Positions 25,301 to 52,300 of a DNA stretch of 64,000 nt are shown here, one piece after another (the stretch's first letter is position 1; every line of letters begins with the position of its first letter). The stretch is taken from positions 21,142,001-21,206,000 of the forward strand of contig OZ004613.1 in the NCBI GenBank assembly GCA_963924565.1. Direction: 5' to 3'. The stretch is from Ascidiella aspersa. Its lineage: Eukaryota. Under the pieces are notes generated by a model. The model did no database searches and was not told the origin of the DNA. It saw nothing but the letters and a program-made list of their open reading frames with translations. The translations under genes were made by a program, and so were the position numbers.

Positions 25301-28300
25301 AAGTATTCGTACAGGGCACGATTTACCTAGCATCAGAAAACAGCAGATGCTGCAATCGAACTTGCATAGATGATGTCGGGCCGAATCGCTTGGAGGAGGT
25401 CTGTTTTAACGAGACTTGCATATACGAATGCGATAATCCCAACCAACAGCATCATTTTCGTGATACCTGGGATAGCAACAAGCCTTGCTGCTACGAGTAC
25501 GATTGTGGTAAGAACTATATAGTATGATGCTTCTTATATTGATGCAGGTGGCAATGTAAGGTTGTGTCAGTGACGTTTGGACAATATAACTAAATAAGAG
25601 CGTTCGAAGTTTCATCGATATGATTACACACGGGCTGTATTTGTGTAACAAGCTTAACAGCGTTCTCTAATTTGCTTATATTAAGTCATGTTATTGCAAA
25701 AAGTAAAATGAATGTGGGTATTTATTACTAAACTGCCTTTAATTTTGTTAGGACACAACTCACTATCTATACATTTTAGCAAATTTATAAAATGTACACC
25801 CACCTTATGTTTTAAAGTTTTAAAAATCTTCCTTGAGGCCGGAATTTTGTTTTTAAAATACGCCCAGATCGCATGAAAAGTTTCGAAAGCCCCAAATGTT
25901 TAAGTTTGAGTATATTTATAGAACCACTTGGCTTACTAAAACAACAATAAACGCTTGTTTGTTATTTTTAATTTTTTTTGTCTAATTGTAAACACTGCTC
26001 GAACACTGCAGTGTGCAACCCACTAACCTGTGCCAACGTGACCTGCTTATCCAATGAGCGCAAGGACCCCGTGACTATGGCTGACGGTGTGACTGTGTGT
26101 TGCGACGTCTATGAATGCGGTAAGATATTTATTTTTAATTACTTGTACACGCTTTCTGGTTTCTGATAGTTTATCACAGTTTAATCTTTTTTCGGATGGA
26201 TGTCTCTTACGTTGTGTTATACAGGTTTATTTGAACTCATTTTTTGTACTTTCACACATATTCCAATTATAGTTCGTTTCCTAAAAAATCTGTGTGGACT
26301 GAAGTTCATTGCCATATTTTATATTTTTTTTACGAAATGCGTACCACCTTTTCAATGTTAAATATAAGATGACATGATTTACTCCAGAACGGGTTGCTAC
26401 CATTGAGCTAAAATAATTTTCACAATACTGATGTCTGCTGCATGTGACCCAAAAGTTGTCATGCTATATGCTTAACTCAGTGCTTCTCAACCTTTTTTCG
26501 CGGCGACCCAATATTAAACATAAGTATGACGACTGAGCTTTTACGACCCAATTGTTTTTTCCTGTAAGCGAAATAAAAACTATAGCTTCTTGCAAGCGAA
26601 CAAAAAATAGGCATTAGCATGAAGAATTTCGAATTTTAATATTTATTCTAAGACATTATTTGGGCTGCTTCCTTAATTGATAAATGTGACTAGAGGTCGG
26701 CGACCCAACCAAATCATACAGCGACCCAATTTGGGGTCGCGACCTATAGGTTAAGAAGCACTGGCTTAACTGCTTCAAGAGCCTGAAAAAATATCAGTTA
26801 TGATTTAGTACGATAAATGTGTTTTCATTCATAATAATTTTTGATTTTAGTTCCTGTCCGATGTTTGTATCGCGGAGAAACTTATGAGGTAAGAAACCAA
26901 TAAAAACATCTTTTGAACAATTATTATAATATCATTAGGGAAAATATTTCACTATATAATATTTTCGAAAACTTTTTTTTTCAGTCATTCGCATCATTAT
27001 GTATTTTAAAAACACAAAGTGTAGTTTGCACTAGGCAAGTTAGGAATATTTTAGATTCTGTACGAACCGTGCTACGGCCAGGTAATACTTTGTTTTCTTT
27101 TTATTTTAACACATAACGAGTAAAATGTATTCCTAACTTCAGCCAAACGAAACGTGGACTGATGACTGCTACCAGTATACTTGTCTTCACAACGTGTCCG
27201 TCTTCGTACCAACACAAATCGGTCATGTCGGGTGCGATGACGAAGTAAATTGCACGTCATGTCAGAAGGAAACTTTTGTGCGGACCGACGAGTGCTGCGG
27301 CGACATTTACACTTGTTGTAAGAATAAAAATACGCTTGTTTAAATTGTACGCTATTGTTTGTCAGTTGTATTTAACCAAACCTAGCAATGTTGGTGTTTT
27401 TTCACATTTTTTTAGTGTTGTACAACCAGTTTTGCAAGGTTCTGCAATACGTTTGTTGGTGTTTGTGTGTGTGTGTGTGTGTGTGTGTTCAAGCATTGTG
27501 GACCTTAACCTAACCATATGTTTAGCTCCGTTGGAATGTCCGACCATAACTTGTGGCGCCGACCAACTAAGAGTTCCCAAAGATGAACAGCCCACACCTT
27601 GTTGTACGGAGTACGAATGCCGATGTAAGATCAATTGAAAGTTTTGGTTTTGTATTTATTTTTGTCAATGTATGCAACTGTTTTCTTTTTCCAGGCAAAT
27701 GTAGCGGTTTGGGTTCAACTTCTTCAACGACGTTTCAATGTAGTCAAACTCTTCAATTTACTGGGAACTGTACCTATCTTTTAACCAAGGTAACCTGTTT
27801 TGTAAAATTATTGTAAAAATATGTAGATTTTGTTGTACAAAACCTTTTATCTAACTTTTTCCGGGGTTGTATTTCGCGCGGTGTTTACCTTAAATAAGCC
27901 GACACGATTAGCGATAAATTTGTGAAAATAAGTCAATTTGATTGTAGGGTAACTTTGTGTACTGTATTTTTTAATTGATCCGTTTATATTTTAGGAGGTA
28001 ACTAGTAGTGATTATGAAGTGTTGGTCGAACAAGGTTCGTGTCGTGGTGTTTATCAATCGGACGTCTACTCGGCCAATCAAATGTGCTACAAAACACTTA
28101 TTGTCAAGTATTTTGATAACACCTACAAGTTCCACGTCGTCACAAACAAGGTTTATTTTTTACTCATCATTCTAAATAGAAAACTATTTGTGTCAGTTAC
28201 AGTCTATTTTATAGAAATTAATGATACATGACTTCTTATACACTAATTATATCGAAACGAGTTGGCTTAACTTTTTCTGTTTGTTGTTACATTTTGTCCT

Positions 28301-31300
28301 ATTCGTGTACGTGTATAGGTTACCATGAACGAAACCCCAATTGACTTCAGTAACCAGATCGGAGGAATAAACGCTCATGTTAGCACGGTTCTAGTCGGTG
28401 GATTGTCGTACATTTCTTTCTTAACCTTAAGTGCGATGGACGGGGGTCTAATCATTACCTACTCAAACCCGAACGTTGCGACAAAGGCCGGTGCTGTTGG
28501 CTTGTTTGAAATCTCTCTTGCTTCGAGTAGCACAAGCGGGGGAACATCGGGATTGTGTGGTATGGCAACATTTACTTATTAATATTTATTAATTTTAGTC
28601 TAGAAGTCAGTGTTCAACTATATAGTTGTATCAAAATTTTGAAATAAAACAAACTCTTAACTGTCACAAATTGTTCTGTATAATATTCGTGTGGTCAGTG
28701 CGTTAGTTATTTCTTGCAATTAAACCACAATTGGCAATACCGACATCATTTTCTGAGTCGTTATGGCACCTGTTTTTGTTGAGGATCATTTCTTACGTTT
28801 TTGCATTTTTAATATACTGTGCAGTTTAATTTGAAATGCTATGATTATATAAATCTGGGATAATGATTTTGAATATAGTAAAATAAGCGTTGCGAAGTTG
28901 ACTTTATCATGAGACTTTTCGATTTGCCTGGCGTTTCATTCTCTTAACGTTTTCTGTTTAATTAAGTTCATGTAGCATTATGACTAAAACATTATATTGG
29001 TAGTTATTTTATCTAAGATGTTATGCAATGTTGTTTAAAAATATATACGAATATTCATAAATGTTTGACTATACCGTTGATTTAGTTATTTGTTTATTTG
29101 TAGGTAATTGCAATGGTACCGGTCACAACAACACGGAATGCGCTTCATTACCACCAGTTGTTGAGTCTGAATACATCGAAGATGACAATTGCTTGCCTCC
29201 ATGTGGTACAGGTGAAACTTGCCAAGAACCCAGATGTCAATCAGTCGGTCCGTGTGGCCCTGAATGCAAATCCTGCACAGACTTGGGATTTAATGATCCT
29301 TGTCAAGTATTGGACGACGCACTTTTCGGTAGGACATGTTAAAAATGTTTTTAATGTACAGATTAAAGATGATAGTTATGATGCGAATGATTTGCTTTTT
29401 TGTTCATAGGAAAATTGCACTTATTTATGAGGTTGATTTTTATATTTTATTGTTATTTTGTTTGCAGCTAAATGTCATGAAGGGATAGACCTGGGTGCTT
29501 TGATTGCGTCTTGTCAAGACGATCAATGTTTAAATCCCAATGACCCAAGTTCAGGTGCCGAAGAACAATGCAACGTTTGTGTTTCACGTTTTATACAACA
29601 GCACATAACCGAATGTATAAGCGGCGGGAATTGCGAAGATTATCAAGAAATTCTAAACTGTGAAAAAGGTAATTTTGGTGCGTTTTGTCTCTCAGCTCTC
29701 GCAAAATACTTTTCAGTTTTGGTTGCGCTTTTTCAAGTATAGACTTTTTTATTTAGATTTGTATTCATTATTTTATTGGTAATTAACAGTTTTGTAATTC
29801 TGTATAGATAACGAGACGTGTGAGGATACCGGAAAAGTGTTCGAAAAATGCATTAGCAGTTGTAAAGCACAAACTACGTGTGATGATATCACTCAAACCA
29901 CTGTAAGAGCAAATTATTGTATTTTAGCGCATATATGAGTTTTTGTGTTAATTAGATAAACATTCATTTTGATATGAGTCGACCTATATAAAGCGTTGTC
30001 TGCCATCGCATGGTATTTCTTTAGGTTAATTGAATATATTTACATTAAATATGTTGATGTGTTTTCGTTTGCAGACCTCAAATTGCACTCATTCTATCGT
30101 GTCCGCCTGCGTTTGTCCAGAGGGTTACGTGTTAAAGAGTGACACTGAACAAGTATGCGTCAAAGAGGAATGTAAGTACTCCACTTTGATTCGGGGATAA
30201 TTTCTAAACAATACGATGTTAAAATTTATTTGCCGTTTAATTTAAATATGTATTAATTATCTCGTTGAAATCAGGTTGCACTTGTCCTGAAGAACCTGAC
30301 TGTGATGAAGGACCTAACTATGATCCTATTGTTATTGACACCGATTCTTGTGGTTGTAATGTCTACAGCGTGACATGTGGTATGATTTGTTGTTAAGTAA
30401 ACATTTTGAATAAATGACAGGGAATGACTAGTAATTTTGTTCCGTAGGTTGTTCACCGAAATGTACTAATCCAATAACAAACAAAGAAATGGAACCTGGA
30501 CATCACTACAAATATGGCTGTGGCAAGTATGTTTGTCCAAGTTACGATCCCCACACCAATCCAAACTGCGAATCACAGGAAGCCACGTTTTCGCGTGACG
30601 ATTGTTTGCATGTAAATTGCTCAAGCAGCAAACTTCCGAAATACCACAACGACCCCGATGAATGCTGTCCAACTGTAACCTGCGAGTGCCCACCACCAAT
30701 TACTCCATCACCCGATTGCACTGATCCCTATCAGATACTTACAAACACAAGTGGAGAATGTCCGACGGAAACGTGTAAGTGCCAATGTCCACCAGTCGGA
30801 GTAAACTGTTCGTCGAGTCCTGGTTGTCGCGTGGTGCCTACAAATAACGTTACGTCAACTATTTGCGGATGCATCGAGAGTTGGGAATGCGTTCCCGACC
30901 CCGATCTGTGTCCACCTGTTACACATTGCAGCACTTGTGAAAATCGAACGAAGGTGGAGACTGTGCCTGGTTCCGGGGAATGTGAGGCCGACTGCGATCT
31001 TTACAGATGTGATCCGAAACCTTGTCCCAGCTATTCACAACCAGAACTACCCTGTCCAAAATATCATCGCGAGATTCCAATTTACGCTGCCAGCGACACC
31101 GACAAATGTTGTCCGATGGAGAAGTGCGAATGCAAATCAGTAGGCGACCTTAAGGCGGAATGTGATCAATGGTATGATTATGAATGTGAAGACGATTACC
31201 TGAGAAATAGGACGAACGATGAAACGGAATGCTGTCCTGAGTATGAGTGTATTTGTAACCAAGCAAATTGTCCACCTCCTGTTAATTGTTCTTGGTTGAC

Positions 31301-34300
31301 ACTTGAAACACACTGGCCTCCGCCGTATGCAACTGGCGCCCACGAAGATGTTTGTTGTGCATCATACAACTGCACCTGTGTTGATGTTCCTTGTCCTCCG
31401 TACAACGAAACTTGTCCGCAATATCAAAAAGTCAGCAGTCGAGACAACACCACTAACCCTTGTTGCCCGACTCACAGCTGTGTTTGTGACCCTGATCAGT
31501 ATCCCGCGTATTATAAATCACCTGAGAACAAGCCAGATGAAAATGGAGTCTGTTCACATCCAGGACAAAAGCCCGACCCCGTATACGACGATCCAACCGG
31601 ATGTTTGGCAAGATGCGTGTGTTATCCATCCGATCAGGTGCTTGGATATTGTGCAGAATATCAGACGGTGCTTGGGGTTTGTCATAGACCCAGAGTGGTG
31701 ACAACCCTAATTCCTGCCGCCGACAATCCAGATTATTATTGCTGTCCCAAGCCGGATTGCCAATGTCCGAATTGTGCTGATGTTCCTAATGCCAAAAATT
31801 GTTCTTTGTGTGAAAAGCGAGTTTTGAATCACACAGATTCATGTTGTGGAGATATATATCGATGTGGTAAGCACTCACTTTATCTTGAACCTTGCAATTG
31901 TCTGATAACAGCGTAAGTATGGCTAAACGTTTACTAACCGCATGTTTAGATCCGCTGGAATGTCCGACCATAACTTGTGGCGCCGATCAACAAAGAGTTC
32001 CCAAAGATGAACAGCCCACACCTTGTTGTACGGAGTACGAATGCCGATGTAAGATCAATTGGAAGTTTTGGTTTGGTATTTATTTTGGTCAATGTATGCA
32101 ACTGTTTTCTTTTTCCAGGCAAATGTAGCGGTTTGGGTTCAACTTCCTCAACGACGTTTCAATGTAATCAAACTCTTCAATTTACTGGGAACTGTACCTA
32201 TCTTTTGACCAAGGTAACCTGTTTTGTAAAATTATTGTAAAAATATGTAGACTTTGTTGTACAAAACCTTTTATCTAACTTTTTACTGAGGTTGTATTTC
32301 GCGCGGTGCTTACTTTAAATTGGCCGACACAGATAAATTTGTGTACTATATTTTTTAAGTTGATCCGTTTATATTTTAGGAGGTAACTAGTAGTGATTAT
32401 GAAGTGTTGGTCGAACAAGGTTCGTGTCGTGATGTTTATCAATCGGACGTCTACTCGGCCAATCAAATGTGCTACAAAACACTTATTGTCAAGTATTTTG
32501 ATAACACCTACAAGTTCCACGTCGTCACAAACGAGGTTTATTTTTTATTTATCAATCTAAATAGAAAACTATTTGTCTCAGTTACAGTCTATTTTATAGA
32601 TTTAATGATACATAGCTTATTGTACACTAATTATATCGAAACGAGTTGGCTTAACTTTTTCTGTTTGTTGTTACATTTTGTCCTATTCGTGTACGTGTAT
32701 AGGTTACCATGAACGAAACCCCAATTGACTTCAGTCACCAGATCGGAGGAATAAACGCTCATGTTAGCACGGTTCTAGTCGGTGGATTGTCGTACATTTC
32801 TTTCTTAACCTTGAGTGCGATGGACGGAGGTCTAATCATTACCTACTCAAACCCAAACGTTGCGACAAAGGCCGGTGCTGTTGGCTTGTTTGAAATTTCT
32901 CTTGCATCGAGTAGCACAAGCGGGGGAACATCGGGATTGTGTGGTATGGCAACATTCACTTATTAATATTTATTAATTTTAATCTAGAAGTCAGTGTTCA
33001 ACTATATAGTTGTACCAAAAATTTGAAATAAAACAACTCTAACTGTCACAAATTGTTCTGTATAATATTCCTGTGGTCAGTGCGTTAGTTATTTCTTGCA
33101 ATTTAATCACAATTGGCAATACCGATTCCATTTTCTGAGTCGTTATGGCACCTGTTTTTGTTGTGGAACATTTCTTACGTTTTTGCATTTTCAATATACT
33201 GTGCAGTTTAATTTGAAATGCTATGATTATATAAATCTGGGATAATGAATTTTGGATGTAGTAAAATAAGCGTTGCGAAGTTGTCCTTATCATGAGACTT
33301 TTCGATTTGCCTGGCATTTCCTTCTTTTAACGTTTTCTATTTAATTAAGTTCTTGTAGCATTATGACTAAAATATTATATTGGTAGTTATTTTATCTAAG
33401 ATGTTATGCAATGTTGTTTAAAAATATATACGAATGTTCTCAAATGTTTGACTATACCGTTGATTTAATTATTTGTTTATTTGTAGGTAATTGCAATGGT
33501 ACCGGTCACAACAACACGGAATGCGCTTCATTACCACCAGTTGTTGAGTCTGAATACATCGAAGATGACAATTGCTTGCCTCCATGTGGTACAGGTGAAA
33601 CTTGCCAAGAACCCAGATGTCAATCAGTCGGTCCGTGTGGCCCTGAATGCAAATCCTGCTCAGACTTGGGATTTAATGATCCTTGTCAAGTATTGGAGGA
33701 CGCACTTTTCGGTAGGACATGTTAAAAATGTTTTTAATGTACAGATTAAAGATGATAGTTATGATGCGAATGATTTGCTTTTTTATTCATAGTAAAATTA
33801 CACTTATTTATGAGGTTGATTTTTATATTTTATTGTTATTTTGTTTGCAGCTAAATGTCATGAAGGGATAGACCTGGCGGCTTTAATTGCGTCTTGTCAA
33901 GACAATCAATGTTTAAATCCCAATGACCCAAGTTCAGGTGCCGAAGAACAATGCAACGTTTGTGTTTCACGTTTTATACAACAGCACATAACCGAATGTA
34001 TAAGCGGCGGGAATTGCGAAGATTATCAAGAAATTCTAAACTGTGAAAAAGGTAATTTTGGTGCGTTTGTCTCTCAGCTCTCGCAAAATACTTTTCAGTT
34101 TTGGTTGCGCTTTTTTAAGTATAGACTTTTTTTATTTAGATTTGTATTCATTATTTTATTAGTAATTAACAGTTTTGTAATTCTGTATAGATAACGAGAC
34201 GTGTGAGGATACCGGAAAAGTGTTCGAAAAATGCATTAGCAGTTGTAAAGCACAAACTACGTGTGATGATATCACTCAAACCACTGTAAGAGCAAATTAT

Positions 34301-37300
34301 TGTATTTTAGCGCATATATGAGTTTTTGTGTTAATTAGATAAACATTCATTTTGATATGAGTCGACCTATATAAAGCGTTGTCTGCCATCGCATGGTATT
34401 TCTTTAGGTTAATTGAATATATTTACATTGAATATGTTGATGTGTTTTCGTTTGCAGACCTCAAATTGCACTCATTCTATCGTGTCCGCCTGCGTTTGTC
34501 CAGAGGGTTACGTGTTAAAGAGTGACACTGAACAAGTATGCGTCAAAGAGGAATGTAAGTACTCCACTTTGATTCGGGGTTAATTTCTAAACAATACGAT
34601 GTTAAAATTTATTTGCCGTTTAATTTAAATATGTATTAATTATCTCGTTGAAATCAGGTTGCACTTGTCCTGAAGAACCTGACTGTGATGAAGGACCTAA
34701 CTATGATCCTATTGTTATTGACACCGATTCTTGTGGTTGTAATGTCTACAGCGTGACATGTGGTATGATTTGTTGTTAAGTAAACATTTTGAATAAATGA
34801 CAGGGAATGACTCGTAATTTTGTTCCGTAGGTTGTTCACCGAAATGTACTAATCCAATAACAAACAAAGAAATGGAACCTGGACATCACTACAAATATGG
34901 CTGTGGCAAGTATGTTTGTCCAAGTTACGATCCCCACACCAATCCAAACTGCGAATCACAGGAAGCCACGTTTTCGCGTGACGATTGTTTGCATGTAAAT
35001 TGCTCAAGCAGCAAACTTCCGAAATACCACAACGACCCCGATGAATGCTGTCCAACTGTAACCTGCGAGTGCCCACCACCAATTACCCCATCACCCGATT
35101 GCACTGATCCCTATCAGATACTTACAAACACAAGTGGAGAATGTCCGACGGAAACGTGTAAGTGCCAATGTCCACCAGTCGGAGTAAACTGTTCGTCGAG
35201 TCCTGGTTGTCGCGTGGTGCCTACCAATAACGTTACGTCAACTATTTGCGGATGCATCGAGAGTTGGGAATGCGTTCCCGACCCCGATCTGTGTCCACCT
35301 GTTACACATTGCAGCACTTGTGAAAATCGAACGAAGGTGGAGACTGTGCCTGGTTCCGGGGAATGTGAGGCCGACTGCGATCTTTACAGATGTGATCCGA
35401 AACCTTGTCCCAGCTATTCACAACCAGAACTACCCTGTCCAAAATATCATCGCGAGATTCCAACTTACGCTGCCAGCGACACCGACAAATGTTGTCCGAT
35501 GGAGAAGTGCGAATGCAAATCAGTAGGCGACCTTAAGGCGGAATGTGATCAATGGTATGATTATGAATGTGAAGACGATTACCTGAGAAATAGGACGAAC
35601 GATAAAACGGAATGCTGTCCTGAGTATGAGTGTATTTGTAACCACGCAAATTGTCCACCTCCTGTTAATTGTTCGTGGTTGACACTTGAAACACACTGGC
35701 CTCCGCCGTATGCAACTGGCGCTCACGAAGATGTTTGTTGTGCATCGTACAACTGCACCTGTGCTGATGTTCCTTGTCCTCCGTACAACGAAACTTGTCC
35801 GCAATATCAAAAAGTCAGCAGTCGAGACAACACCACTAACCCTTGTTGCCCGACTCACAGCTGTGTTTGTGACCCTGATCAGTATCCCGCGTATTATAAA
35901 TCGCCTGAGAACAAGCCAGATGAAAATGGAGTCTGTTCACATCCAGGACAAAAGCCCGACCCCGTATACGATGATCCAACCGGATGTTTGGCAAGATGCG
36001 TGTGTTATCCATCCGATCAGGTGCTTGGATATTGTGCAGAATATCAGACGGTGCTTGGGGTTTGTCATAGACCCAGAGTGGTGACAACCCTAATTCCTGC
36101 CGCCGACAATCCAGATTATTATTGCTGTCCCAAGCCGGATTGCCAATGTCCGAATTGTGCTGATGTCCCTAATGCCAAAAATTGTTCTTTGTGTGAAAAG
36201 CGAGTTTTGAATCACACAGATTCATGTTGTGGAGATATATATCGATGTGGTAAGCACTCACTTTATCTTGAACCTTGCAATTGTCTGATAACACCGTAAG
36301 TATGGCTAAACGTTTAATAACCGCATCTTTAGATCCGCTGGAATGTCCGACCATAACTTGTGGCGCCGATCAACAAAGAGTTCCCAAAGATGAACAGCCC
36401 ACACCTTGTTGTACGGAGTACGAATGCCGATGTAAGATCAATTGAAAATTTTAATTTTGTATTTATTTTTGTCAATGTATGCAACTGTTTTCTTTTTCCA
36501 GGCAAATGTAGCGGTTTGGGTTCAACTTCTTCAACGACGTTTCAATGTAATCAAACTCTTCAATTTACTGGGAACTGTACCTATCTTTTGACCAAGGTAA
36601 CCTGTTTTGCAAAATTATTGTAAAAATGAGTAGATTTTGTTGTACAAAACCTTTTATCTAACTTTTTGCTGGGGTTGTATTTCGCGCTGTTTACTTTAAA
36701 TAGGCCGACACTGATAAATTTGTGAAAATATGGGAATTTGATTGGAAGGTAACTTTGTGTACTGTATTTTTTAATTGATCCGTTTATATTTTAGGAGGTA
36801 ACTAGTAGTGATTATGAAGTTTTGGTCGAACAAGGTTCATGTAGTGATGTTTATCAATCGGACGTCTACTCGGCCAATCAAATGTGCTACAAAACACTTA
36901 TTGTCAAGTATTTTGATAACACCTACAAGTTTCACGTCGTCACAAACGAGGTTTATTTTTTAATTTCTCAATCTAAATAGAAAACTATTTGTGTCAGTTA
37001 CAGTCTATTTTATAGAAATTAATGATACATGACTTCTTATACACTAATTATATTGAAACGAGTTGGCTTAACTTTTTCTGTTTGTTGTTACATTTTGTCC
37101 TATTCGTGTACGTGTATAGGTTACCATGAACGAAACCCCAATTGACTTCAGTAACCAGATCGGAGGAATAAACGCTCATGTTAGCACGGTTCTAGTCGGT
37201 GGATTGTCGTACATTTCTTTCTTAACCTTAAGTGCGATGGACGGGGGTCTAATCATAACCTACTCAAACCCGAACGTTGCGACAAAGGCTGGTGCTGTTG

Positions 37301-40300: not shown

Positions 40301-43300
40301 CCGCGTATTATAAATCGCCTGAGAACAAGCCAGATGAAAATGGAGTCTGTTCACATCCAGGACAAAAGCCCGACCCCGTATACGATGATCCAACCGGATG
40401 TTTGGCAAGATGCGTGTGTTATCAATCCGATCAGGTGCTTGGATATTGTGCAGAATATCAGACGGTGCTTGGGGTTTGTCATAGACCCAGAGTGGTGACA
40501 ACCCTAATTCCTGCCGCCGACAATCCAGATTATTATTGCTGTCCCAAGCCGGATTGCCAATGTCCGAATTGTGCTGATGTTCCTAATGCCAAAAATTGTT
40601 CTTTGTGTGAAAAGCGAGTTTTGAATCACACAGATTCATGTTGTGGAGATATATATCGATGTGGTAAGCACTCACTTTATCTTGAACCTTGCAATTGTCT
40701 GATAACAGCGTAAGTATGGCTAAACGTTTACTAACCGCATCTTTAGATCCGCTGGAATGTCCGACCATTACTTGTGGCGCCGATCAACAAAGAGTTCCCA
40801 AAGATGAACAGCCCACACCTTGTTGTACGGAGTACGAATGCCGATGTAAGATCAGTTGAAAGTTTTGGTTTTGTATTTATTTTTGTCAATGTGTGCAACT
40901 GTTTTCTTTTTCCAGGCAAATGTAGCGGTTTGGGTTCAACTTCTTCAACGACGTTTCAATGTAATCAAACTCTTCAATTTACTGGGAACTGTACCTATCT
41001 TTTGACCAAGGTAACCTGTTTTGCAAAATTATTGTAAAAATGAGTAGATTTTGTTGTACAAAACCTTTTATCTAACTTTTTGCTGGGGTTGTATTTCGCG
41101 CTGTTTACTTTAAATAGGCCGACACTGATAAATTTGTGAAAATATGGGAATTTGATTGGAAGGTAACTTTGTGTACTGTATTTTTTAATTGATCCGTTTA
41201 TATTTTAGGAGGTAACTAGTAGTGATTATGAAGTTTTGGTCGAACAAGGTTCATGTAGTGATGTTTATCAATCGGACGTCTACTCGGCCAATCAAATGTG
41301 CTACAAAACACTTATTGTCAAGTATTTTGATAACACCTACAAGTTTCACGTCGTCACAAACGAGGTTTATTTTTTAATTTCTCAATCTAAATAGAAAACT
41401 ATTTGTGTCAGTTACAGTCTATTTTATAGAAATTAATGATACATGACTTCTTATACACTAATTATATTGAAACGAGTTGGCTTAACTTTTTCTGTTTGTT
41501 GTTACATTTTGTCCTATTCGTGTACGTGTATAGGTTACCATGAACGAAACCCCAATTGACTTCAGTAACCAGATCGGAGGAATAAACGCTCATGTTAGCA
41601 CGGTTCTAGTCGGTGGATTGTCGTACATTTCTTTCTTAACCTTAAGTGCGATGGACGGGGGTCTAATCATAACCTACTCAAACCCGAACGTTGCGACAAA
41701 GGCTGGTGCTGTTGGCTTGTTTGAAATCTCTCTTGCATCGAGTAGCACAAGCGGGGGAACATCGGGATTGTGTGGTATGGCACCATTCACTTATTAATAT
41801 TTATTAATTCTAATCTAGAAGGCAGTGTTCAACTATAGTTGTATCGAAATTTTGAAATAAAAAAACACTAATTGTCACAAATTTTTCTGTATAATATTCC
41901 TATGGTCAGTGCGTTAGTTATTTCTTGCAATTTAATCACAATTGGTAATACCGACATCATTTTCTAAGTCTTTATGGCACCTGTTTTTGTTGTGCAACAT
42001 TTCTTACGTTTTTGCATTTTCAATATACTGTGCAGTTTAATTTGAAATGCTATGATTATATAAATCTGGGATAATGAATTTTGGATGTAGTAAAATAAGC
42101 GTTGCGAAGTTGACTTTATCATGAGACTTTTCGATTTGCCTGGCGTTTCATTCTCTTAACGTTTTCTATTTATTTAAGTTCTTGTAGCGTTATGACTAAT
42201 ACATTATATTGGTAGTTATTTTATCTGAGATGTTATGCAATGTTGTTTAAAAATATATACGAATATTCATAAATGTTTGACTATACCGTTGATTTAATTA
42301 TTTGTTTATTTGTAGGTAATTGCAATGGTACCGGTCACAACAACACGGAATGCGCTTCATTACCACCAGTTGTTGAGTCTGAATACATCGAAGATGACAA
42401 TTGCTTGCCTCCATGTGGTACAGGTGAAACTTGCCAAGAACCCAGATGTCAATCAGTCGGTCCGTGTGGCCCTGAATGCAAATCCTGCACAGACTTGGGA
42501 TTTAATGATCCTTGTCAAGTATTGGAGGACGCACTTTTCGGTAGGACATGTTAAAATGTTTTTAATGTACAGATTAAAGATGATAGTTATGATGCGAATG
42601 ATTTGCTTTTTTATTCCTAGGAAAATTGCACTTATTTATGAGGTTGATTTTTATATTTTATTGTTATTTTGTTTGCAGCTAAATGTCATGAAGGGATAGA
42701 CCTGGGTGCTTTGATTGCGTCTTGTCAAGACGATCAATGTTTAAATCCCAATGACCCAAGTTCAGGTGCCGAAGAACAATGCAACGTTTGTGTTTCACGT
42801 TTTATACAACAGCACATAACCGAATGTATAAGCGGCGGGAATTGCGAAGATTATCAAGAAATTCTAAACTGCGAAAAAGGTAATTTTGGTGCGTTTGTCT
42901 CTCAGCTCTCGCAAAATACTTTTCAGTTTTGTTTGCGCTTTTTTAAGTATAGACTTTTTTCATTTAGATTTGTATTCATTATTTTATTGGTAATTAACAG
43001 TTTTGTAATTCTGTATAGATAACGAGACGTGTGAGGATACCGGAAAAGTGTTCGAAAAATGCATTAGCAGTTGTGAAGCACAAACTACGTGTGATGATAT
43101 CACTCAAACCACTGTAAGAGCAAATTATTGTATTTTAGCGCATCTATGAGTTTTTGTGTTAATTAGATAAACATTCATTTTGATATTAGTCGACCTATAT
43201 AAAGCGTTGTCTGCCATCGCATGGTATTTCTTTAGGTTAATTGAATATATTTATATTAAATATGTTGATGTGTTTTCGTTTGCAGACCTCAAATTGCACT

Positions 43301-46300
43301 CATTCTATCGTGTCCGCCTGCGTTTGTCCAGAGGGTTACGTGTTAAAGAGTGACACTGAACAAGTATGCGTCAAAGAGGAATGTAAGTACTCCACTTTGA
43401 TTCGGGGTTAATTTCTAAACAATACGATGTTAAAATTTATTTGCCGTTTAATTTAAATATGTATTAATTATCTCGTTGAAATCAGGTTGCACTTGTCCTG
43501 AAGAACCTGACTGTGATGAAGGACCTAACTATGATCCTATTGTTATTGACACCGATTCTTGTGGTTGTAATGTCTACAGCGTGACATGTGGTATGATTTG
43601 TTTTCAAGTAAACATTTTGAATAAATGACAGGGAATGACTCGTAATTTTGTTCCGTAGGTTGTTCACCGAAATGTACTAATCCAATAACAAACAAAGAAA
43701 TGGAACCTGGACATCACTACAAATATAGCTGTGGCAAGTACGTTTGTCCAAGTTACGATCCCCACACCAATCCAAACTGCGAATCACAGGAAGCCACGTT
43801 TTCGCGTGACGATTGTTTGCATGTAAATTGCTCAAGCAGCAAACTTCCGAAATACCACAACGACCCCGATGAATGCTGTCCAACTGTAACCTGCGAGTGC
43901 CCACCACCAATTACTCCATCACCCGATTGCACTGATCCCTATCAGATACTTACAAACACAAGTGGAGAATGTCCGACGGAAACGTGTAAGTGCCAATGTC
44001 CACCAGTCGGAGTAAACTGTTCGTCGAGTCCTGGTTGTCGCGTGGTGCCTACAAATAACGTTACGTCAACTATTTGCGGATGCATCGAGAGTTGGGAATG
44101 CGTTCCCGACCCCGATCTGTGTCCACCTGTTACACATTGCAGCACTTGTGAAAATCGAACGAAGGTGGAGACTGTGCCTGGTTCCGGGGAATGTGAGGCC
44201 GACTGCGATCTTTACAGATGTGATCCGAAACCTTGTCCCAGCTATTCACAACCAGAACTACCCTGTCCAAAATATCATCGCGAGATTCCAACTTACGCTG
44301 CCAGCGACACCGACAAATGTTGTCCGATGGAGAAGTGCGAATGCAAATCAGTAGGCGACCTTAAGGCGGAATGTGATCAATGGTATGATTATGAATGTGA
44401 AGACGATTACCTGAGAAATAGGACGAACGATAAAACGGAATGCTGTCCTGAGTATGAGTGTATTTGTAACCAAGCAAATTGTCCACCTCCTGTTAATTGT
44501 TCTTGGTTGACACTTGAAACACACTGGCCTCCGCCGTATGCAACTGGCGCCCACGAAGATGTTTGTTGTGCATCATACAACTGCACCTGTGTTGATGTTC
44601 CTTGTCCTCCGTACAACGAAACTTGTCCGCAATATCAAAAAGTCAGCAGTCGAGACAACACCACTAACCCTTGTTGCCCGACTCACAGCTGTGTTTGCGA
44701 CCCTGATCAGTATCCCGCGTATTATAAATCGCCTGAGAACAAGCCAGATGAAAATGGAGTCTGTTCACATCCAGGACAAAAGCCCGACCCCGTATACGAT
44801 GATCCAACCGGATGTTTGGCAAGATGCGTGTGTTATCCATCCGATCAGGTGCTTGGATATTGTGCAGAATATCAGACGGTGCTTGGGGTTTGTCATATAC
44901 CCAGAGTGGTGACAACCCTAATTCCTGCCGCCGACAATCCAGATTATTATTGCTGTCCCAAGCCGGATTGCCAATGTCCGAATTGTGCTGATGTCCCTAA
45001 TGCCAAAAATTGTTCTTTGTGTGAAAAGCGAGTTTTGAATCACACAGATTCATGTTGTGGAGATATATATCGTTGTGGTAAGCACTCACTTTATCTTGAA
45101 CCTTGCAATTGTCTGATAACACCGTAAGTATGGCTAAACGTTTAATAACCGCATCTTTAGATCCGCTGGAATGTCCGACCATAACTTGTGGCGCCGACCA
45201 ACAAAGAGTTCCCAAAGATGAACAGCCCACACCTTGTTGTACGGAGTACGAATGCCGATGTAAGATCAATTGAAAATTTTAATTTTGTATTTATTTTTGT
45301 CAATGTATGCAACTGTTTTCTTTTTCCAGGCAAATGTAGCGGTTTGGGTTCAACTTCTTCAACGACGTTTCAATGTAATCAAACTCTTCAATTTACTGGG
45401 AACTGTACCTATCTTTTGACCAAGGTAACCTGTTTTGCAAAATTATTGTAAAAATGAGTAGATTTTGTTGTACAAAACCTTTTATCTAACTTTTTGCTGG
45501 GGTTGTATTTCGCGCTGTTTACTTTAAATAGGCCGACACTGATAAATTTGTGAAAATATGGGAATTTGATTGGAAGGTAACTTTGTGTACTGTATTTTTT
45601 AATTGATCCGTTTATATTTTAGGAGGTAACTAGTAGTGATTATGAAGTTTTGGTCGAACAAGGTTCATGTAGTGATGTTTATCAATCGGACGTCTACTCG
45701 GCCAATCAAATGTGCTACAAAACACTTATTGTCAAGTATTTTGATAACACCTACAAGTTTCACGTCGTCACAAACGAGGTTTATTTTTTAATTTCTCAAT
45801 CTAAATAGAAAACTATTAGTGTCAGTTACAGTCTATTTTATAGAAATTAATGATACATGACTTCTTATACACTAATTATATTGAAACGAGTTGGCTTAAC
45901 TTTTTCTGTTTGTTGTTACATTTTGTCCTATTCGTGTACGTGTATAGGTTACCATGAACGAAACCCCAATTGACTTCAGTAACCAGATCGGAGGAATAAA
46001 CGCTCATGTTAGCACAGTTCTAGTCGGTGGATTGTCGTACATTTCTTTCTTAAGCTTAAGTGCGATGGACGGGGGTCTAATCATAACCTACTCAAACCCG
46101 AACGTTGCGACAAAGGCTGGTGCTGTTGGCTTGTTTGAAATCTCTCTTGCATCGAGTAGCACAAGCGGGGGAACATCGGGATTGTGTGGTATGGCACCAT
46201 TCACTTATTAATATTTATTAATTCTAATCTAGAAGGCAGTGTTCAACTATAGTTGTATCGAAATTTTGAAATAAAAAAACACTAATTGTCACAAATTTTT

Positions 46301-49300
46301 CTGTATAATATTCCTATGGTCAGTGCGTTAGTTATTTCTTGCAATTTAATCACAATTGGTAATACCGACATCATTTTCTAAGTCTTTATGGCACCTGTTT
46401 TTGTTGTGCAACATTTCTTACGTTTTTGCATTTTCAATATACTGTGCAGTTTAATTTGAAATGCTATGATTATATAAATCTGGGATAATGAATTTTGGAT
46501 GTAGTAAAATAAGCGTTGCGAAGTTGACTTTATCATGAGACTTTTCGATTTGCCTGGCGTTTCATTCTCTTAACGTTTTCTATTTATTTAAGTTCTTGTA
46601 GCGTTATGACTAATACATTATATTGGTAGTTATTTTATCTGAGATGTTATGCAATGTTGTTTAAAAATATATACGAATATTCATAAATGTTTGACTATAC
46701 CGTTGATTTAATTATTTGTTTATTTGTAGGTAATTGCAATGGTACCGGTCACAACAACACGGAATGCGCTTCATTACCACCAGTTGTTGAGTCTGAATAC
46801 ATCGAAGATGACACTTGCTTGCCTTCATGTGGTACAGGTGAAACTTGCCAAGAACCCAGATGTCAATCAGTCGGTCCGTGTGGCCCTGAATGCAAATCCT
46901 GCACAGACTTGGGATTTAATGATCCTTGTCAAGTATTGGAGGACGCACTTTTCGGTAGGACATGTTAAAATGTTTTTAATGTACAGATTAAAGATGATAG
47001 TTATGATGCGAATGATTTGCTTTTTTATTCCTAGGAAAATTGCACTTATTTATGAGGTTGATTTTTATATTTTATTGTTATTTTGTTTGCAGCTAAATGT
47101 CATGAAGGGATAGACCTGGGTGCTTTGATTGCGTCTTGTCAAGACGATCAATGTTTAAATCCCAATGACCCAAGTTCAGGTGCCGAAGAACAATGCAACG
47201 TTTGTGTTTCACGTTTTATACAACAGCACATAACCGAATGTATAAGCGGCGGGAATTGCGAAGATTATCAAGAAATTCTAAACTGTGAAAAAGGTAATTT
47301 TGGTTCGTTTGTCTCTCAGCTTTCGCAAAATACTTTTCAGTTTAGGTTGCGGTTTTTTAAGTATAGACCTTTTTCATTTAGATTTGTATTCATTATTTTA
47401 TTGGTAATTAACAGTTTTGTAATTCTGTATAGATAACGAGACGTGTGAGGATACCGGAAAAGTGTTCGAAAAATGCATTAGCAGTTGTGAAGCACAAACT
47501 ACGTGTGATGATATCACTCAAACCACTGTAAGAGCAAATTATTGTATTTTAGCGCATCTATGAGTTTTTGTGTTAATTAGATAAACATTCATTTTGATAT
47601 TAGTCGACCTATATAAAGCGTTGTCTGCCATCGCATGGTATTTCTTTAGGTTAATTGAATATATTTATATTAAATATGTTGATGTGTTTTTGTTTGCAGA
47701 CCTCAAATTGCACTCATTCTATCGTGTCCGCCTGCGTTTGTCCAGAGGGTTACGTGTTAAAGAGTGACACTGAACAAGTATGCGTCAAAGAGGAATGTAA
47801 GTACTCCACTTTGATTCGGGGTTAATTTCTAAACAATACGATGTTAAAATTTATTTGCCGTTTAATTTAAATATGTATTAATTATCTCGTTGAAATCAGG
47901 TTGCACTTGTCCTGAAGAACCTGACTGTGATGAAGGACCTAACTATGATCCTATTGTTATTGACACCGATTCTTGTGGTTGTAATGTCTACAGCGTGACA
48001 TGTGGTATGATTTGTTTTCAAGTAAACATTTTGAATAAATGACAGGGAATGACTCGTAATTTTGTTCCGTAGGTTGTTCACCGAAATGTACTAATCCAAT
48101 AACAAACAAAGAAATGGAACCTGGACATCACTACAAATATGGCTGTGGCAAGTACGTTTGTCCAAGTTACGATCCCCACACCAATCCAAACTGCGAATCA
48201 CAGGAAGCCACGTTTTCGCGTGACGATTGTTTGCATGTAAATTGCTCAAGCAGCAAACTTCCGAAATACCACAACGACCCCGATGAATGCTGTCCAACTG
48301 TAACCTGCGAGTGCCCACCACCAATTACTCCATCACCCGATTGCACTGATCCCTATCAGATACTTACAAACACAAGTGGAGAATGTCCGACGGAAACGTG
48401 TAAGTGCCAATGTCCACCAGTCGGAGTAAACTGTTCGTCGAGTCCTGGTTGTCGCGTGGTGCCTTCAAATAACGTTACGTCAACTATTTGCGGATGCATC
48501 GAGAGTTGGGAATGCGTTCCCGACCCCGATCTGTGTCCACCTGTTACACATTGCAGCACTTGTGAAAATCGAACGAAGGTGGAGACTGTGCCTGGTTCCG
48601 GGGAATGTGAGGCCGACTGCGATCTTTACAGATGTGATCCGAAACCTTGTCCCAGCTATTCACAACCAGAACTACCCTGTCCAAAATATCATCGCGAGAT
48701 TCCAACTTACGCTGCCAGCGACACCGACAAATGTTGTCCGATGGAGAAGTGCGAATGCAAATCAGTAGGCGACCTTAAGGCGGAATGTGATCAATGGTAT
48801 GATTATGAATGTGAAGACGATTACCTGAGAAATAGGACGAACGATAAAACGGAATGCTGTCCTGAGTATGAGTGTATTTGTAACCAAGCAAATTGTCCAC
48901 CTCCTGTTAATTGTTCGTGGTTGACACTTGAAACACACTGGCCTCCGCCGTATGCAACTGGCGCCCACGAAGATGTTTGTTGTGCATCATACAACTGCAC
49001 CTGTGTTGATGTTCCTTGTCCTCCGTACAACGAAACTTGTCCGCAATATCAAAAAGTCAGCAGTCGAGACAACACCACTAACCCTTGTTGCCCGACTTAC
49101 AGCTGTGTTTGTGACCCTGATCAGTATCCCGCGTATTATAAATCACCTGAGAACAAGCCAGATGAAAATGGAGTCTGTTCACATCCAGGACAAAAGCCCG
49201 ACCCCGTATACGATGATCCAACCGGATGTTTGGCAAGATGCGTGTGTTATCCATCCGATCAGGTGCTTGGATATTGTGCAGAATATCAGACGGTGCTTGG

Positions 49301-52300
49301 GGTTTGTCATAGACCCAGAGTGGTGACAACCCTAATTCCTGCCGCCGACAATCCAGATTATTATTGCTGTCCCAAGCCGGATTGCCAATGTCCGAACTGT
49401 GGAGAAGAATATGTGTCAAAGTTAGAATTAGAAGCACAGCTTGAGCCTGGTGAGATCGTGTTACCCAAAGAGCCTTTATCCGAGTGTTGTCAAGAATACG
49501 AAAAGAGGTGCGACCCGGATGCCGAAACTAGACCGGACTGTGTCAGCTTGAAGCCAACATGTCCTGTTGGCTACAAATGGGAGCGCAATCAAACCAAAGT
49601 GGGGTGTTGCCCCGACTATTACTGCGTTTGTGTGCTTGACAATTGTTTCGTACCACCTTGTAATGCTCCAAAGGTTCTTAACAGTACCGAATCGGGTTCA
49701 TGTTGCAAAAACTACACGTGTAAATGCCCGCCCAGCACGGACCCGGTTGTGTGTACTCTGCCCAAGGTCGATGCCTTTACAGAAACAGATTGTCCTCAGA
49801 AGTACTGCAAATGCCCCGACGTGTGCCCCAATGAAGTGACGAGCAATTGCACTAACAAGCCAGGCTGCCGTTCCGTCCCAATCAGCACCGACGAATGTGG
49901 CTGCGCCACAAACTCTACGTGTATTAATGACCCGTCGCCTTGCGAACCGGCACCCAACTGTGCCAACTGCTCTTCGCCAGTGGAAACAGGCAGCGTTGAC
50001 AAAGTGGGAGAATGCAATTCGACTTGCCCGACGTTCAGCTGCGAGCCCGACGAATGCCCGCCCGATCCCATGCCACCACTTTGCCTTTGGAATACGATCA
50101 CTTTCAACCTCACAGACCCGTGCTGTCCTACGAAGGTTGCAATATGCAACACAAAAAAATGCCCGAGCACCACTTGTCCGTCGGGATACGGCAAGCGACC
50201 AATAGAAGGAGAGTACTGGGACAACGACCGTGACTGCGCGCCCGGCCTCACCTGTTGCCCAAAGGAAGAGTGCTTCTGCGACGTCTGTTTGTACAAGGGT
50301 GTCCCACATGTTGTCGGGGACGAGTGGGTCGACATGTCAGAGTCGTGCAACATGCTGATGTGCACGGGTAACCGAACCGGCGATTGCTTTACTGTCATTG
50401 AACGCTTGCCCTTCTGCTGGGTGTACGCACCCAACGGGACTCTCTTAATGCTCACCGTGGGCACACAGCTGCCATATCCCGACGACCCGTGCAAGTCAAC
50501 CGAGTGTCACATTCTAGAAGAAACCTGCCAGACCTACGAGGCGGAAGGAAACGACCAGTGCCCACAGCTGCTCACCTGCGACAGTTACCACAAGCTGGAG
50601 ACAAACCACACATCGGGCGTCTGTTGTCCATCCCAGCAGTGCATTTGCAAACCATGCGGCGGGGATTACCAGTCAAAGCCCGACCGCGACATGATGAGCT
50701 GGGAAACTGAGGTGAACGAAACCTTGAACCAGAATCCAAACCAGATTTGCTGTCCGCGCTCGCAGTTCCAATGCGCGGGCATCGACATCTTGTCCGGGAT
50801 TTGCCCGCAATGGAATTTCACCTGTCCTGTCGGTAAGGAGAGGTTGCGGACGAACCCAGAGGAAGAGTGCTGTCCCGAGTTTATTTGTGTTTGCAAACCC
50901 TGCGCCAAGGTCACAAATCCCGTTCCAATACACGATTGCGAGTACCTGGTAAACAAAACTGTCGAGGAAAACCCGCTGCAGGAGTGCTGTCCAGCAGCCA
51001 GGTTGGAGTGCCACTTAGAGAGTGATTGTTGCGGAAGCGATTACCAAAGCTACGAGCAAGTTAACGCATCTTTGGATGTCGGCGAAGAAATCACCAGTAA
51101 GCCCGAAAGCCACATTTGTTGCCCCATTTACGAACCCAGGTGTATCGATGGGATCGCTTCGAGTGCGACCTGTGCGCCGTACAACGAAACTTGCGAGGTC
51201 GGGTATCGCCACCAGCGAAGCGAATTTAACGTCGGATGCTGTCCGGTATACTACTGCGTGTGCAACGAAACACTGTGCCCGCCCAGGCCAGACTGCCCGG
51301 CGCCCATGAATTACAATGAGACCGGCACTATTGGAGAGTGCTGCAAAACGTGGGAGTGTAAGTGTCCACCTGACACGAATGAAACGCTTGTATGCGTCCC
51401 CCCAGAACAGGTGTTTAACACTACGAGCATTTGCCCGACTCAGTACTGTCGGTGTCCAGAAGCGATCGAATGCCCGTACAACCCTGATGTGGACAACTGT
51501 ACGTCGGCTGCTGGATGTAGGCCCGAGGTAGAAAGCCGTGATTCCTGCGAATGCGTCAACTCGTCTATCTGCGTAAACGATCCAAATCTCTGCCCCGCTG
51601 AGCCTGACTGCGGCGACTGTTTCGAGTCAAAGGACTCCGGCCTTCTTCCGGGTTCGGGCGACTGTGTGGCCACTTGTACAAACTACACTTGTCAGCCTAA
51701 GGCCTGTTGGTCTCCACCAGCTCCGTCGATATGCCAGCTTGAGCAGATCAACACGGTCATTGTTGACTGCTGTCCAGTGCATAGCAAAACCTGCAAACCA
51801 AATGCTTGCCCCAACATTACGTGCCCGGCTGGTTATGTTGGTCGTTTCTACGGCGACTACTACGACGACGACCATGACTGCACCCCTAGTCTGTACTGCT
51901 GCCCAAAGCTGGTTTGTGTGTGCAATGCTTGCTTCGACAACGGCGTCATAAAATCACTGGGAGCTCTGTGGCAGGACCCGAACGACGTGTGCCAGTATAA
52001 AACATGCAGCGCAACTCTGGGAGAAGATAATTGTTACACTGTGCATACCGAGTTTCCAACCTGCATTTCGGGAGGCGAGAAATATCCGGTAAACTCGTCC
52101 TTGCCTACAGGCAACCCGTGCACGCAGGTTGTTTGTCATCAGAACAGGACCAATACGCACTGCATCACCTCTTTCTTAGCTACTACCGTGAAGTGTGGCG
52201 GGCCACCTTTGTGTCCAGAGTTCTATATCCCGAATTCAACTTATCCATTCGGTGTATGCTGTCCTAGCTACACTTGTATATGCAACGAGTGCGGCAGCAA

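What the first reader, a model, noticed from the sequence alone, without database searches (positions are those of the whole stretch)
27526..49400. Five-fold tandem amplification of a whole 10-exon, 911-aa, phase 1-1 cassette inside one gene
Seen: five ~4.4-kb copies (offsets 4424, 4383, 4414, 4414) with introns nearly as conserved as exons. Each coding unit is 2733 nt and begins and ends in phase 1. I saw no stop, frameshift, lost splice site or lost Cys in any copy. Inference: the cassette acts as a giant coding VNTR. Copy number could vary between alleles by unequal crossover, and whole cassettes could be skipped in frame, tuning subunit length in 911-aa steps.
Basis: partly seen in the sequence, partly recalled or inferred. 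Interest (0 to 1): 0.8.

Follow-up and report, generated by a model that had tools for sequence, protein, structure and literature searches.

The report
Five-copy exon cassette in tunicate mucin
A giant mucin-like gene of a sea squirt relative carries a ten-exon, 911-amino-acid block repeated about five times head to tail and still intact, a known way of making proteins longer in large steps.

Summary
The repeat is real. Window 27511-49401 holds 4.96 head-to-tail copies of a 4.4-kb unit. The copies are 97.4-99.3% identical.

Each of units 1-4 carries ten exons. These sum to 2733 nt (911 codons), enter and leave in phase 1, and have intact AG/GT sites, no stops and unchanged Cys. Unit 5 has exons 1-9, but its tenth exon has no donor of its own. 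It runs on into a 6.4-kb exon.

- **Selection:** exons differ by 0.5-1.3% and introns by 0.9-4.8%. dN/dS is 0.12-0.28, so the copies are kept as coding sequence.
- **Not an assembly artefact:** read depth in another individual is about 6 times the flank. Collapsed contigs of two more samples give about 4 and 5 times. Six reads and two contigs cross the unit-to-unit joint.
- **Expression:** stranded RNA reads confirm four of the splice joints.
- **Gene identity:** a tunicate gel-forming-mucin/VWF-like gene with D assemblies, a TTTQAP x19 stretch and a cystine-knot-like end. The cassette is a D4-like VWD-TIL assembly plus a Cys-rich, weakly VWC-like block.

Copy-number variation is suggested but not shown. 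Cassette skipping was not tested. This is a new member of a known kind (LPA KIV-2, CR1, FCGBP).

The parts
27511..49401 (+). Tandem array, 4.96 units of about 4.4 kb
27511..31933 (+). Unit 1. Exons 27526-27624, 27695-27789, 27995-28150, 28319-28559, 29104-29328, 29468-29668, 29808-29902, 30075-30171, 30275-30379, 30448-31866
   Evidence: RNA joints 28559>29104, 29668>29808, 29902>30075 and 30171>30275
31934..36316 (+). Unit 2. Exons 31950-32048, 32119-32213, 32380-32535, 32703-32943, 33487-33711, 33851-34051, 34191-34285, 34458-34554, 34658-34762, 34831-36249
36317..40730 (+). Unit 3. Exons 36333-36431, 36502-36596, 36795-36950, 37120-37360, 37901-38125, 38265-38465, 38605-38699, 38872-38968, 39072-39176, 39245-40663
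40731..45144 (+). Unit 4. Exons 40747-40845, 40916-41010, 41209-41364, 41534-41774, 42316-42540, 42679-42879, 43019-43113, 43286-43382, 43486-43590, 43659-45077
45145..49401 (+). Unit 5 (partial). Exons 45161-45259, 45330-45424, 45623-45778, 45948-46188, 46730-46954, 47093-47293, 47433-47527, 47700-47796, 47900-48004. Exon 10 starts at 48073 and runs on
48073..54496 (+). 6.4-kb exon. Its first 1329 nt are exon 10 of unit 5. The rest is older E10-like Cys-rich blocks, 24-39% identical to exon 10
27143..27317 (+). Exon U upstream of the array (start approximate). It ends in phase 1. Its ...CCGDIYTC end resembles the tail of exon 10 only at protein level
2816..17071 (+). N-terminal D assemblies of the same gene: exon pieces hitting Pfam C8, TIL and VWD
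17861..18200 (+). Small mucin-type repeat, TTTQAP x19 (18-nt period, 18.9 copies)
59928..60164 (+). Cystine-knot-like last exon (Pfam DAN, E 0.003, below the cut-off)

Best explanation
The array is a real, transcribed, in-frame tandem amplification inside a tunicate gel-forming-mucin/VWF-like gene. The repeated cassette encodes a D4-like assembly: a VWD domain, a Cys-rich stretch and a TIL domain. This is followed by a 473-residue Cys-rich block that looks weakly VWC-like.

It most likely grew from an older state with two cassettes, through unequal crossing-over between neighbouring units. The newest units lie at the 3' end. All copies are held under purifying selection, so the secreted, disulfide-linked subunit gains 911 residues (112 Cys) per unit.

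Shown: the array, its integrity, selection on the exons, multi-copy depth in other samples, the transcribed strand and four splice joints.

Inferred: the unequal-crossover history, use of all units in one mRNA, copy-number differences between individuals, and the mucus or gut-barrier role.
For: - **Array and exon model:**
- **Selection:** exons differ by 0.53-1.29% and introns by 0.87-4.82%. dN/dS is 0.12-0.28 and no Cys changes.
- **History:** 157 of 168 variable sites fit the tree ((u1,u2),(u3,(u4,u5))), and neighbouring units are the most alike.
- **Only one locus:** the genome holds the exon-10 head five times, all in the array.
- **Depth:** X9 DNA reads give about 37 in the unit against about 5.9 in the flank. 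The expected single-copy depth is about 6.3 (1936 Mb read over a 308.6-Mb genome). X1 contigs give 206-263 against 67. X2 contigs give 377-518 against 97.
- **Tandem joint:** 31992>27569 is crossed by 6 X9 reads, 1 X1 contig and 1 X2 contig.
- **RNA:** almost all reads inside the array lie in one orientation, and there are four GT..AG joints at my exon ends.
- **Gene family:** Pfam VWD, C8 and TIL in upstream exons and a TTTQAP repeat. The Clavelina homologue of the cassette hits VWD at 3.7e-12 and TIL at 2.9e-5.
- **Older state:** P0001, from another sample, is 93.0-93.9% identical to every unit's exon 10, including the read-through into the intron. A non-terminal unit therefore exists elsewhere, while the units here coalesce much later.
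Against: - No read or contig spans the array, so the exact number and order of units rest on the assembly.
- Contig depth is flagged by the tool as no copy number. The X9 flank estimate rests on three 200-nt bins.
- RNA cover is thin: 140 reads, and only 4 of the 10 junction types were seen. By my rough hand sums, depth is about 0.7-1.5 in upstream exons against 1.7-6.3 in cassette exons. This cannot fix how many units enter one mRNA.
- 11 of 168 sites break the tree, so there is some gene conversion.
- The unit tail (31777-31933) has no DNA match to either flank of the array, so the first duplication junction cannot be reconstructed.
- C8 is not recognised in the cassette.
- The VWC reading of exon 10 rests on weak leads only.
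Confidence: 0.8

Rival explanations
1. The array is real but fixed. A few recent duplications now have the same copy number in every individual, so it is not a VNTR.
For: The site patterns are mostly tree-like, with few signs of exchange. The depth ratios of 4, 5 and 6 have wide errors, and the tool warns against reading contig depth as copy number.
Against: Three samples give three different ratios. In X9, unit-1-private alleles appear in 12 of 295 reads (4%) where 20% is expected. Alleles shared by units 3-5 are at 80% where 60% is expected. So the make-up of the array differs between individuals. Only the 40 best-supported of 196 differing places were listed, which favours such sites.
Confidence: 0.3
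2. The copy number is an assembly artefact: haplotypes laid in tandem, or an over-expanded repeat.
For: No single read or contig spans the array. In X1, probably the source sample because its flank contigs show 0 differences, the contig depth ratio is only 3.1-3.9.
Against: X9 depth is about 6 times the flank and about 5.9 times the genome-wide expectation. The X2 ratio is 3.9-5.5. The five units differ by 168 ordered variable sites that form a tree, not two haplotype sets. There is no other copy in the genome.
Confidence: 0.05
3. The units are alternative cassettes. One or a few are chosen per transcript, by skipping or mutually exclusive use, rather than all being joined.
For: Every unit enters and leaves in phase 1 and is 3 x 911 nt long, so any subset keeps the frame.
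Against: The units differ at only 24 of 911 codons, so a choice between them would change almost nothing except length. RNA depth in cassette exons is several times that in upstream single-copy exons (rough). No joint bearing on this was seen.
Confidence: 0.07

Closest known systems
Human LPA kringle IV-2 array
   Same: An intragenic head-to-tail array in which each unit holds whole exons and introns and is read through in frame. It is listed as a 5.6-kb unit with 5 copies in the reference at >99% (table row and text passage of PMC2588610).
   Different: That unit is small (two exons, 114 aa) and its copy number varies widely in people; both points are recalled, not from a call. Here the unit is ten exons and 911 aa, of VWD/TIL/Cys-rich type, and variation is not yet shown.
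Human FCGBP internal triplication
   Same: A mucus protein built of VWD assemblies, with a multi-exon tandem array inside the gene: 48-kb array, 15.7-kb unit, 3 copies, >95% (table row of PMC2588610).
   Different: This gene has a TTTQAP stretch, a cystine-knot-like end and no GDPH in the cassette exons. The GDPH motif of FCGBP is named in the abstract of PMC10880436 (search listing). The unit here has one VWD plus a large Cys-rich block, and there are five units. My search in PMC8267560 found no passage on the triplication.
Human CR1 long homologous repeats
   Same: An 18.6-kb unit with 3 copies at >97% inside the gene (table row of PMC2588610). Length forms of the protein that differ by one whole repeat through unequal crossing-over are recalled, not from a call.
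   Different: The domains are Sushi domains, and it is a membrane receptor rather than a polymer-forming secreted protein.
Ciona Ci-GFM1 gel-forming mucin
   Same: The same scaffold: D1, D2, D'D3, a small PTS stretch, D4, VWC, CK and a chitin-binding domain (passages of PMC6109156). Here a CBM_14 exon lies 2.4 kb before the window on the same strand.
   Different: Ci-GFM1 is 2880 aa with one D4 and two VWC domains. Here the D4-like assembly plus its Cys-rich block occurs five times, and exons between 27.5 and 54.5 kb alone sum to about 6200 codons. Orthology was not tested. Supplementary Fig. 5e of that paper, which I could not see, may bear on it.
Clavelina lepadiformis XP_076818448.1 (uncharacterized protein)
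   Same: The closest named relative: exon 10 is 45% identical over 449 aa and exons 2-9 match in order. It has two cassettes of its own, 47-50 of 50 residues identical per window over about 400 aa.
   Different: It has two copies rather than five. Its unit is 595 aa and lacks the long exon-10 block between the copies. Identity decays at both edges, which looks like conversion of an older pair.

Membership tests
Gel-forming mucin / VWF family | N-terminal VWD-C8-TIL assemblies | tested here: met
   Exon pieces hit VWD (2.6e-11, 2.4e-8, 3e-5), C8 (8.3e-15, 2.1e-20, 1e-13) and TIL (2.7e-11; 1.4e-4 and 4.3e-4, both below the cut-off) between 2816 and 17071. The VWD of the first assembly was not located.
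Gel-forming mucin / VWF family | Central Pro/Thr/Ser-rich repeat | tested here: met
   TTTQAP x19 at 17861-18200. It is small, as in Ci-GFM1.
Gel-forming mucin / VWF family | C-terminal cystine knot | tested here: inconclusive
   59928-60164 hits DAN at E 0.003 with 18 bits, against a cut-off of 22.
Gel-forming mucin / VWF family | D4 assembly followed by VWC domains | tested here: inconclusive
   The window's cassette exons alone give only a weak TIL hit. The Clavelina homologue of exons 2-9 hits VWD at 3.7e-12 and TIL at 2.9e-5, but no C8. Exon 10 has no Pfam hit and no match among solved structures. Leads to VWC are weak: Atlas score 0.77, and Foldseek CCN3 vWC at prob 0.97 but E 0.19 on a model with pLDDT 62.
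Multi-exon coding tandem array (LPA KIV-2 / CR1 / FCGBP kind) | Head-to-tail units that hold whole exons and introns inside one gene | tested here: met
   The tandem joint is seen in three runs.
Multi-exon coding tandem array (LPA KIV-2 / CR1 / FCGBP kind) | Unit coding length is a multiple of 3 with the same phase at both ends | tested here: met
   2733 nt, phase 1 in and phase 1 out, in units 1-4. Unit 5 lacks the last 90 nt and the donor.
Multi-exon coding tandem array (LPA KIV-2 / CR1 / FCGBP kind) | Copy number differs between individuals | tested here: inconclusive
   Depth ratios are about 4 (X1), about 5 (X2) and about 6 (X9). The array make-up differs in X9. There are no spanning reads.
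Multi-exon coding tandem array (LPA KIV-2 / CR1 / FCGBP kind) | All units present in the mature mRNA | tested here: inconclusive
   140 RNA reads and four joints. The depth ratio is rough.
FCGBP | GDPH autocleavage motif in VWD domains | tested here: not met
   No GDPH in any exon of any unit.

The most novel reading that the evidence does not exclude
The array is a copy-number-polymorphic coding macrosatellite. It sets the subunit length of a chitin-binding, net-forming mucin in 911-residue steps. The same D4-like segment is amplified again and again in ascidian lineages: five units here, a near-identical pair in Clavelina, and two old cassettes in the neighbouring paralogue. This would make it a hot spot through which filter feeders adjust the mechanics of their mucus or gut barrier.
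Probability: 0.25. Interest if true: 0.6.

Novelty: new member of a known kind. Interest (0 to 1): 0.4.

Why it matters
Large in-frame exon-cassette arrays are a known route to length variation in secreted and surface proteins. Well-checked cases outside vertebrates are few. This one sits in the polymer-forming mucin/VWF scaffold of a tunicate, the sister group of vertebrates. It is also one of the larger coding units, at 911 aa and 112 Cys.

If copy number varies, it offers a tractable natural series for asking how subunit length changes a disulfide-linked mucus network. The Cys-rich block of exon 10 also marks a family seen so far almost only in tunicates: 8 hits among 1.84 billion representatives.

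Tried and rejected
- Tandem Repeats Finder found nothing in the array because its longest period is 500.
- Pfam on single cassette exons gave only a sub-threshold TIL hit.
- Pfam on the whole 3613-aa and 2383-aa relatives gave nothing, even at E 10. A 420-aa part did hit VWD and TIL, so the blanks are probably a filter effect on long Cys-rich proteins.
- Exon 10 had no match in PDB sequences. It had no Pfam hit as a whole or in seven overlapping pieces of 112-120 aa. The giant exon had none either.
- The AlphaFold model of exon 10, from a nine-row alignment, was poor (pLDDT 62.3, pTM 0.28). Foldseek gave no row at E <= 0.001. I use its VWC rows only as a lead.
- I looked for the origin of the unit tail (31777-31933). 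It has no DNA similarity to the sequence left of the array beyond 16 nt, and none to the sequence right of 49401.
- In the metagenome relative (L001-L003) I found one cassette joined to the giant exon. There is no exon-10-like exon within about 1.9 kb upstream (L002), but the contig ends there, so a second cassette is not excluded.
- Paper searches for this array or gene in tunicates found nothing specific.
- A search of this scan's notes by words found nothing.
- I rejected a reading as FCGBP (no GDPH) and a reading as a pseudogene array (dN/dS, intact sites, RNA).
Full report
**Observation.** The window holds a clean tandem array.
- The repeat finder gives families of five copies spaced 4424/4383/4414/4414.
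- A 20-mer offset count peaks at 4414 and its multiples.
- blastn of one unit against the window gives 27511-49401 as four full units plus 4257 of 4414 nt.
- Pairwise identity without gaps is 97.4-99.3%. Units 3, 4 and 5 are closest to each other.
- The genome (308.6 Mb, 75 contigs; the window is contig 7, 21142001-21206000) holds the first 600 nt of exon 10 five times, all inside this array.

**Exon model.** I read unit 1 in three frames and placed ten exons: 99, 95, 156, 241, 225, 201, 95, 97, 105 and 1419 nt. That sums to 2733 nt, or 911 codons.
- The phases on entry to exons 1-10 are 1, 1, 0, 0, 1, 1, 1, 0, 1, 1. Exon 10 leaves in phase 1.
- After mapping through the alignment, all 49 exons with both ends mapped have AG and GT, have no stops, and carry the same number of Cys in each unit.
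- The 35 split codons give the same residue in all units, except the first (Ser after exon U, Asp after exon 10). None is a stop, and two are Cys. Each full unit therefore encodes 112 Cys.
- Exon U upstream ends in phase 1.
- The fifth unit differs. Similarity stops at 49401, which is nt 1329 of its exon 10. The frame then stays open to a GTGAGT donor after 54496. So there are four whole cassettes and a fifth fused to the 6.4-kb exon.

**Selection and history.**
- Exon columns differ by 0.53-1.29% between units and intron columns by 0.87-4.82%. Introns are very similar, but 1.5 to 4.3 times more diverged than exons.
- Counted per exon without split codons, dN/dS is 0.12-0.28 for all ten pairs. 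Synonymous differences are 1.3-3.9%. 24 codons vary in amino acid, and none involves Cys.
- Of 168 ungapped variable sites, 157 fit one tree, ((u1,u2),(u3,(u4,u5))). The other 11 do not; 5 of these are a single pattern, 3 of them clustered at columns 131-137.
- Neighbouring units are the most alike and the youngest pair lies at the 3' end. This is what stepwise unequal crossing-over gives.
- The flank differs between individuals by about 2%: 11 differences in 590 nt in X2, and 6 near-fixed differences in about 320 nt in X9. The units are therefore about as far apart as alleles are in this species.

**Reads from other samples (stretch 26000-31999).**
- *X9 (Illumina DNA, raw reads).* Depth summed over both orientations is 6.8, 5.1 and 5.8 in the three clean flank bins (26800-27399). 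It is 30-44, mean 36.8, in 29000-31799. That is a ratio of about 6.
- The genome-wide expectation is 1936 Mb read over 308.6 Mb, about 6.3, which agrees with the flank.
- *X1 and X2 (Logan contigs).* Flank contigs have depth 66.7 and 97.4. Unit contigs have 206-263 and 377-535. The ratios are 3.1-3.9 and 3.9-5.5. The tool warns that such depths are no copy number, so I use them only to say 'several'.
- The joint from the end of one unit to the start of the next (31992>27569) is crossed by six X9 reads and by one contig each in X1 and X2.
- X9 is another individual. At 18 listed sites where only unit 1 differs, 12 of 295 reads carry the unit-1 letter. At 14 sites where units 3-5 share a letter, 238 of 298 reads carry it, against 60% expected. 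Only the 40 best-supported of 196 differing places were listed, and 34 of them lie in the unit.
- X1 is probably the source sample, because its flank contigs show 0 differences. This is an inference.
- Together this rules out one or two copies. It hints that number and make-up vary, but does not prove it.

**RNA.**
- X10 is a stranded RNA library, with 140 reads laid. Inside the array every read lies with its first mate on the minus strand. The only plus-orientation depth falls over the dispersed repeat at 26400-26799.
- For the usual library type, that orientation means RNA of the plus strand.
- Four GT..AG joints, with 3-4 reads each, fall exactly on my exon ends: 4>5, 6>7, 7>8 and 8>9.
- The other six junction types were not listed.
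- By my hand sums, depth is about 0.7-1.5 in the two upstream exons and 1.7-6.3 in cassette exons. This fits several units per mRNA, but is too thin to count them.

**What the gene is.**
- Upstream exon pieces hit Pfam C8, TIL and VWD in the order of three D assemblies.
- 17861-18200 encodes TTTQAP x19.
- 20-27 kb holds small Cys-rich exons that end in CCPxYEC-like motifs.
- The last exon is cystine-knot-like, below the cut-off.
- A CBM_14 chitin-binding exon lies 2.4 kb before the window on the same strand.
- This is the scaffold described for Ciona Ci-GFM1 and for vertebrate gel-forming mucins and VWF (passages of PMC6109156).

**What the cassette is.** The cassette sits where the D4 assembly sits in that scaffold.
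- Its own exons are too short for Pfam.
- The Clavelina protein that matches exons 2-9 in order hits VWD at 3.7e-12 and TIL at 2.9e-5 over that stretch.
- No C8 was recognised.
- Exon 10 has no Pfam or PDB sequence match.
- Three weak leads point to VWC-like modules: the Atlas (0.77), the name 'kielin/chordin-like' that NCBI gives the Styela relative, and compact Foldseek rows to CCN3, MUC2 C-terminal and collagen IIA VWC domains on a poor model.

**Relatives.** Exon 10 finds only 8 proteins among 1.84 billion representatives.
- The named ones are from the ascidians Clavelina lepadiformis and Styela clava. The window's organism is therefore very probably a tunicate. This is an inference; its name is coded.
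- Clavelina has two cassettes of its own, nearly identical in the core and decaying at both edges.
- An unnamed relative in three metagenome contigs is 45% identical over the giant exon. It has exons 1-9 joined straight to the giant exon, like unit 5 here.
- P0001, from another sample, is 93.0-93.9% identical to every unit's exon 10. It shares the tail and the first 15 codons of the intron. A non-terminal unit therefore exists in another taxon, yet the five units here are far closer to each other than to it.
- A paralogous gene 7-40 kb upstream has two old cassettes, 48% identical to each other and about 39% to this one.
- Cassette duplication in this family has thus happened at several depths of time.

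**How it most likely works.**
- An older duplication fused the head of the giant exon to a short '...CCGDIY.C' module, which stands before exon 1 in every cassette and species seen. This made an exon 10 with its own donor.
- Unequal crossing-over between units then added and replaced units. The core stayed uniform while the left edge (exon U, units 1 and 2) drifted.
- Each unit adds one D4-like assembly and a string of small disulfide-rich modules to a subunit that probably polymerises through its D3 and cystine-knot ends, as in mucins and VWF. That last point follows from knowledge of the family and was not tested here.

**Known kinds and novelty.**
- The same paper's table lists CR1 (18.6 kb x3) and FCGBP (15.7 kb x3, >95%).
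- This array is a new member of that kind, in a new host gene and lineage, with a large unit.
- My paper searches found no report of it. These cover open-access text only.

**Earlier scan note.** Note s1-792941 on the 6.4-kb exon agrees with what I saw: exon-10-like blocks at 24-39% identity recur along it.

**Limits.**
- There are no spanning reads.
- Supplements were closed.

Noticed in passing
window 26478-26728: A dispersed high-copy element sits in the intron before exon U. X9 depth there is 5-10 times the flank and X1/X2 contig depth is more than 100 times the flank. Many loose ends fall at 26477-26511 and 26695-26728.
   Followed up: partly
window 27450-27496: A (TG)n microsatellite lies 14 nt left of the array's left edge.
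   Followed up: no
G000:C7:21102137-21135073 (L005, L008, L006, L009): A paralogous gene lies upstream on the same strand. It has two old cassettes, each followed by a large open exon (1222 and 1876 aa). The two are 48% identical to each other. The gene ends in a Cys_knot-like exon.
   Followed up: partly
L009:7341-7604 (C7:21139341-21139604): A CBM_14 chitin-binding exon (E 4e-7) lies between the upstream gene's end and the window's first D assembly. It may be the start of this gene, as in Ciona Ci-GFM1.
   Followed up: partly
protein P0002 (Clavelina lepadiformis XP_076818448.1), residues 112-699 vs 707-1292: This protein has its own pair of cassettes. They are nearly identical in the core and decay at both edges, which looks like gene conversion of an older duplicate.
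   Followed up: partly
window 30448-31866 and 48073-54496: The Cys-rich block of exon 10 belongs to a family with only 8 hits among 1.84 billion representatives and no Pfam model. 59 columns, 51 of them Cys, are invariant across nine aligned blocks.
   Followed up: partly
window 60453-60898: An assembly gap (446 N) flanked by TG-rich microsatellites, just after the cystine-knot-like exon. I left it as it is.
   Followed up: no
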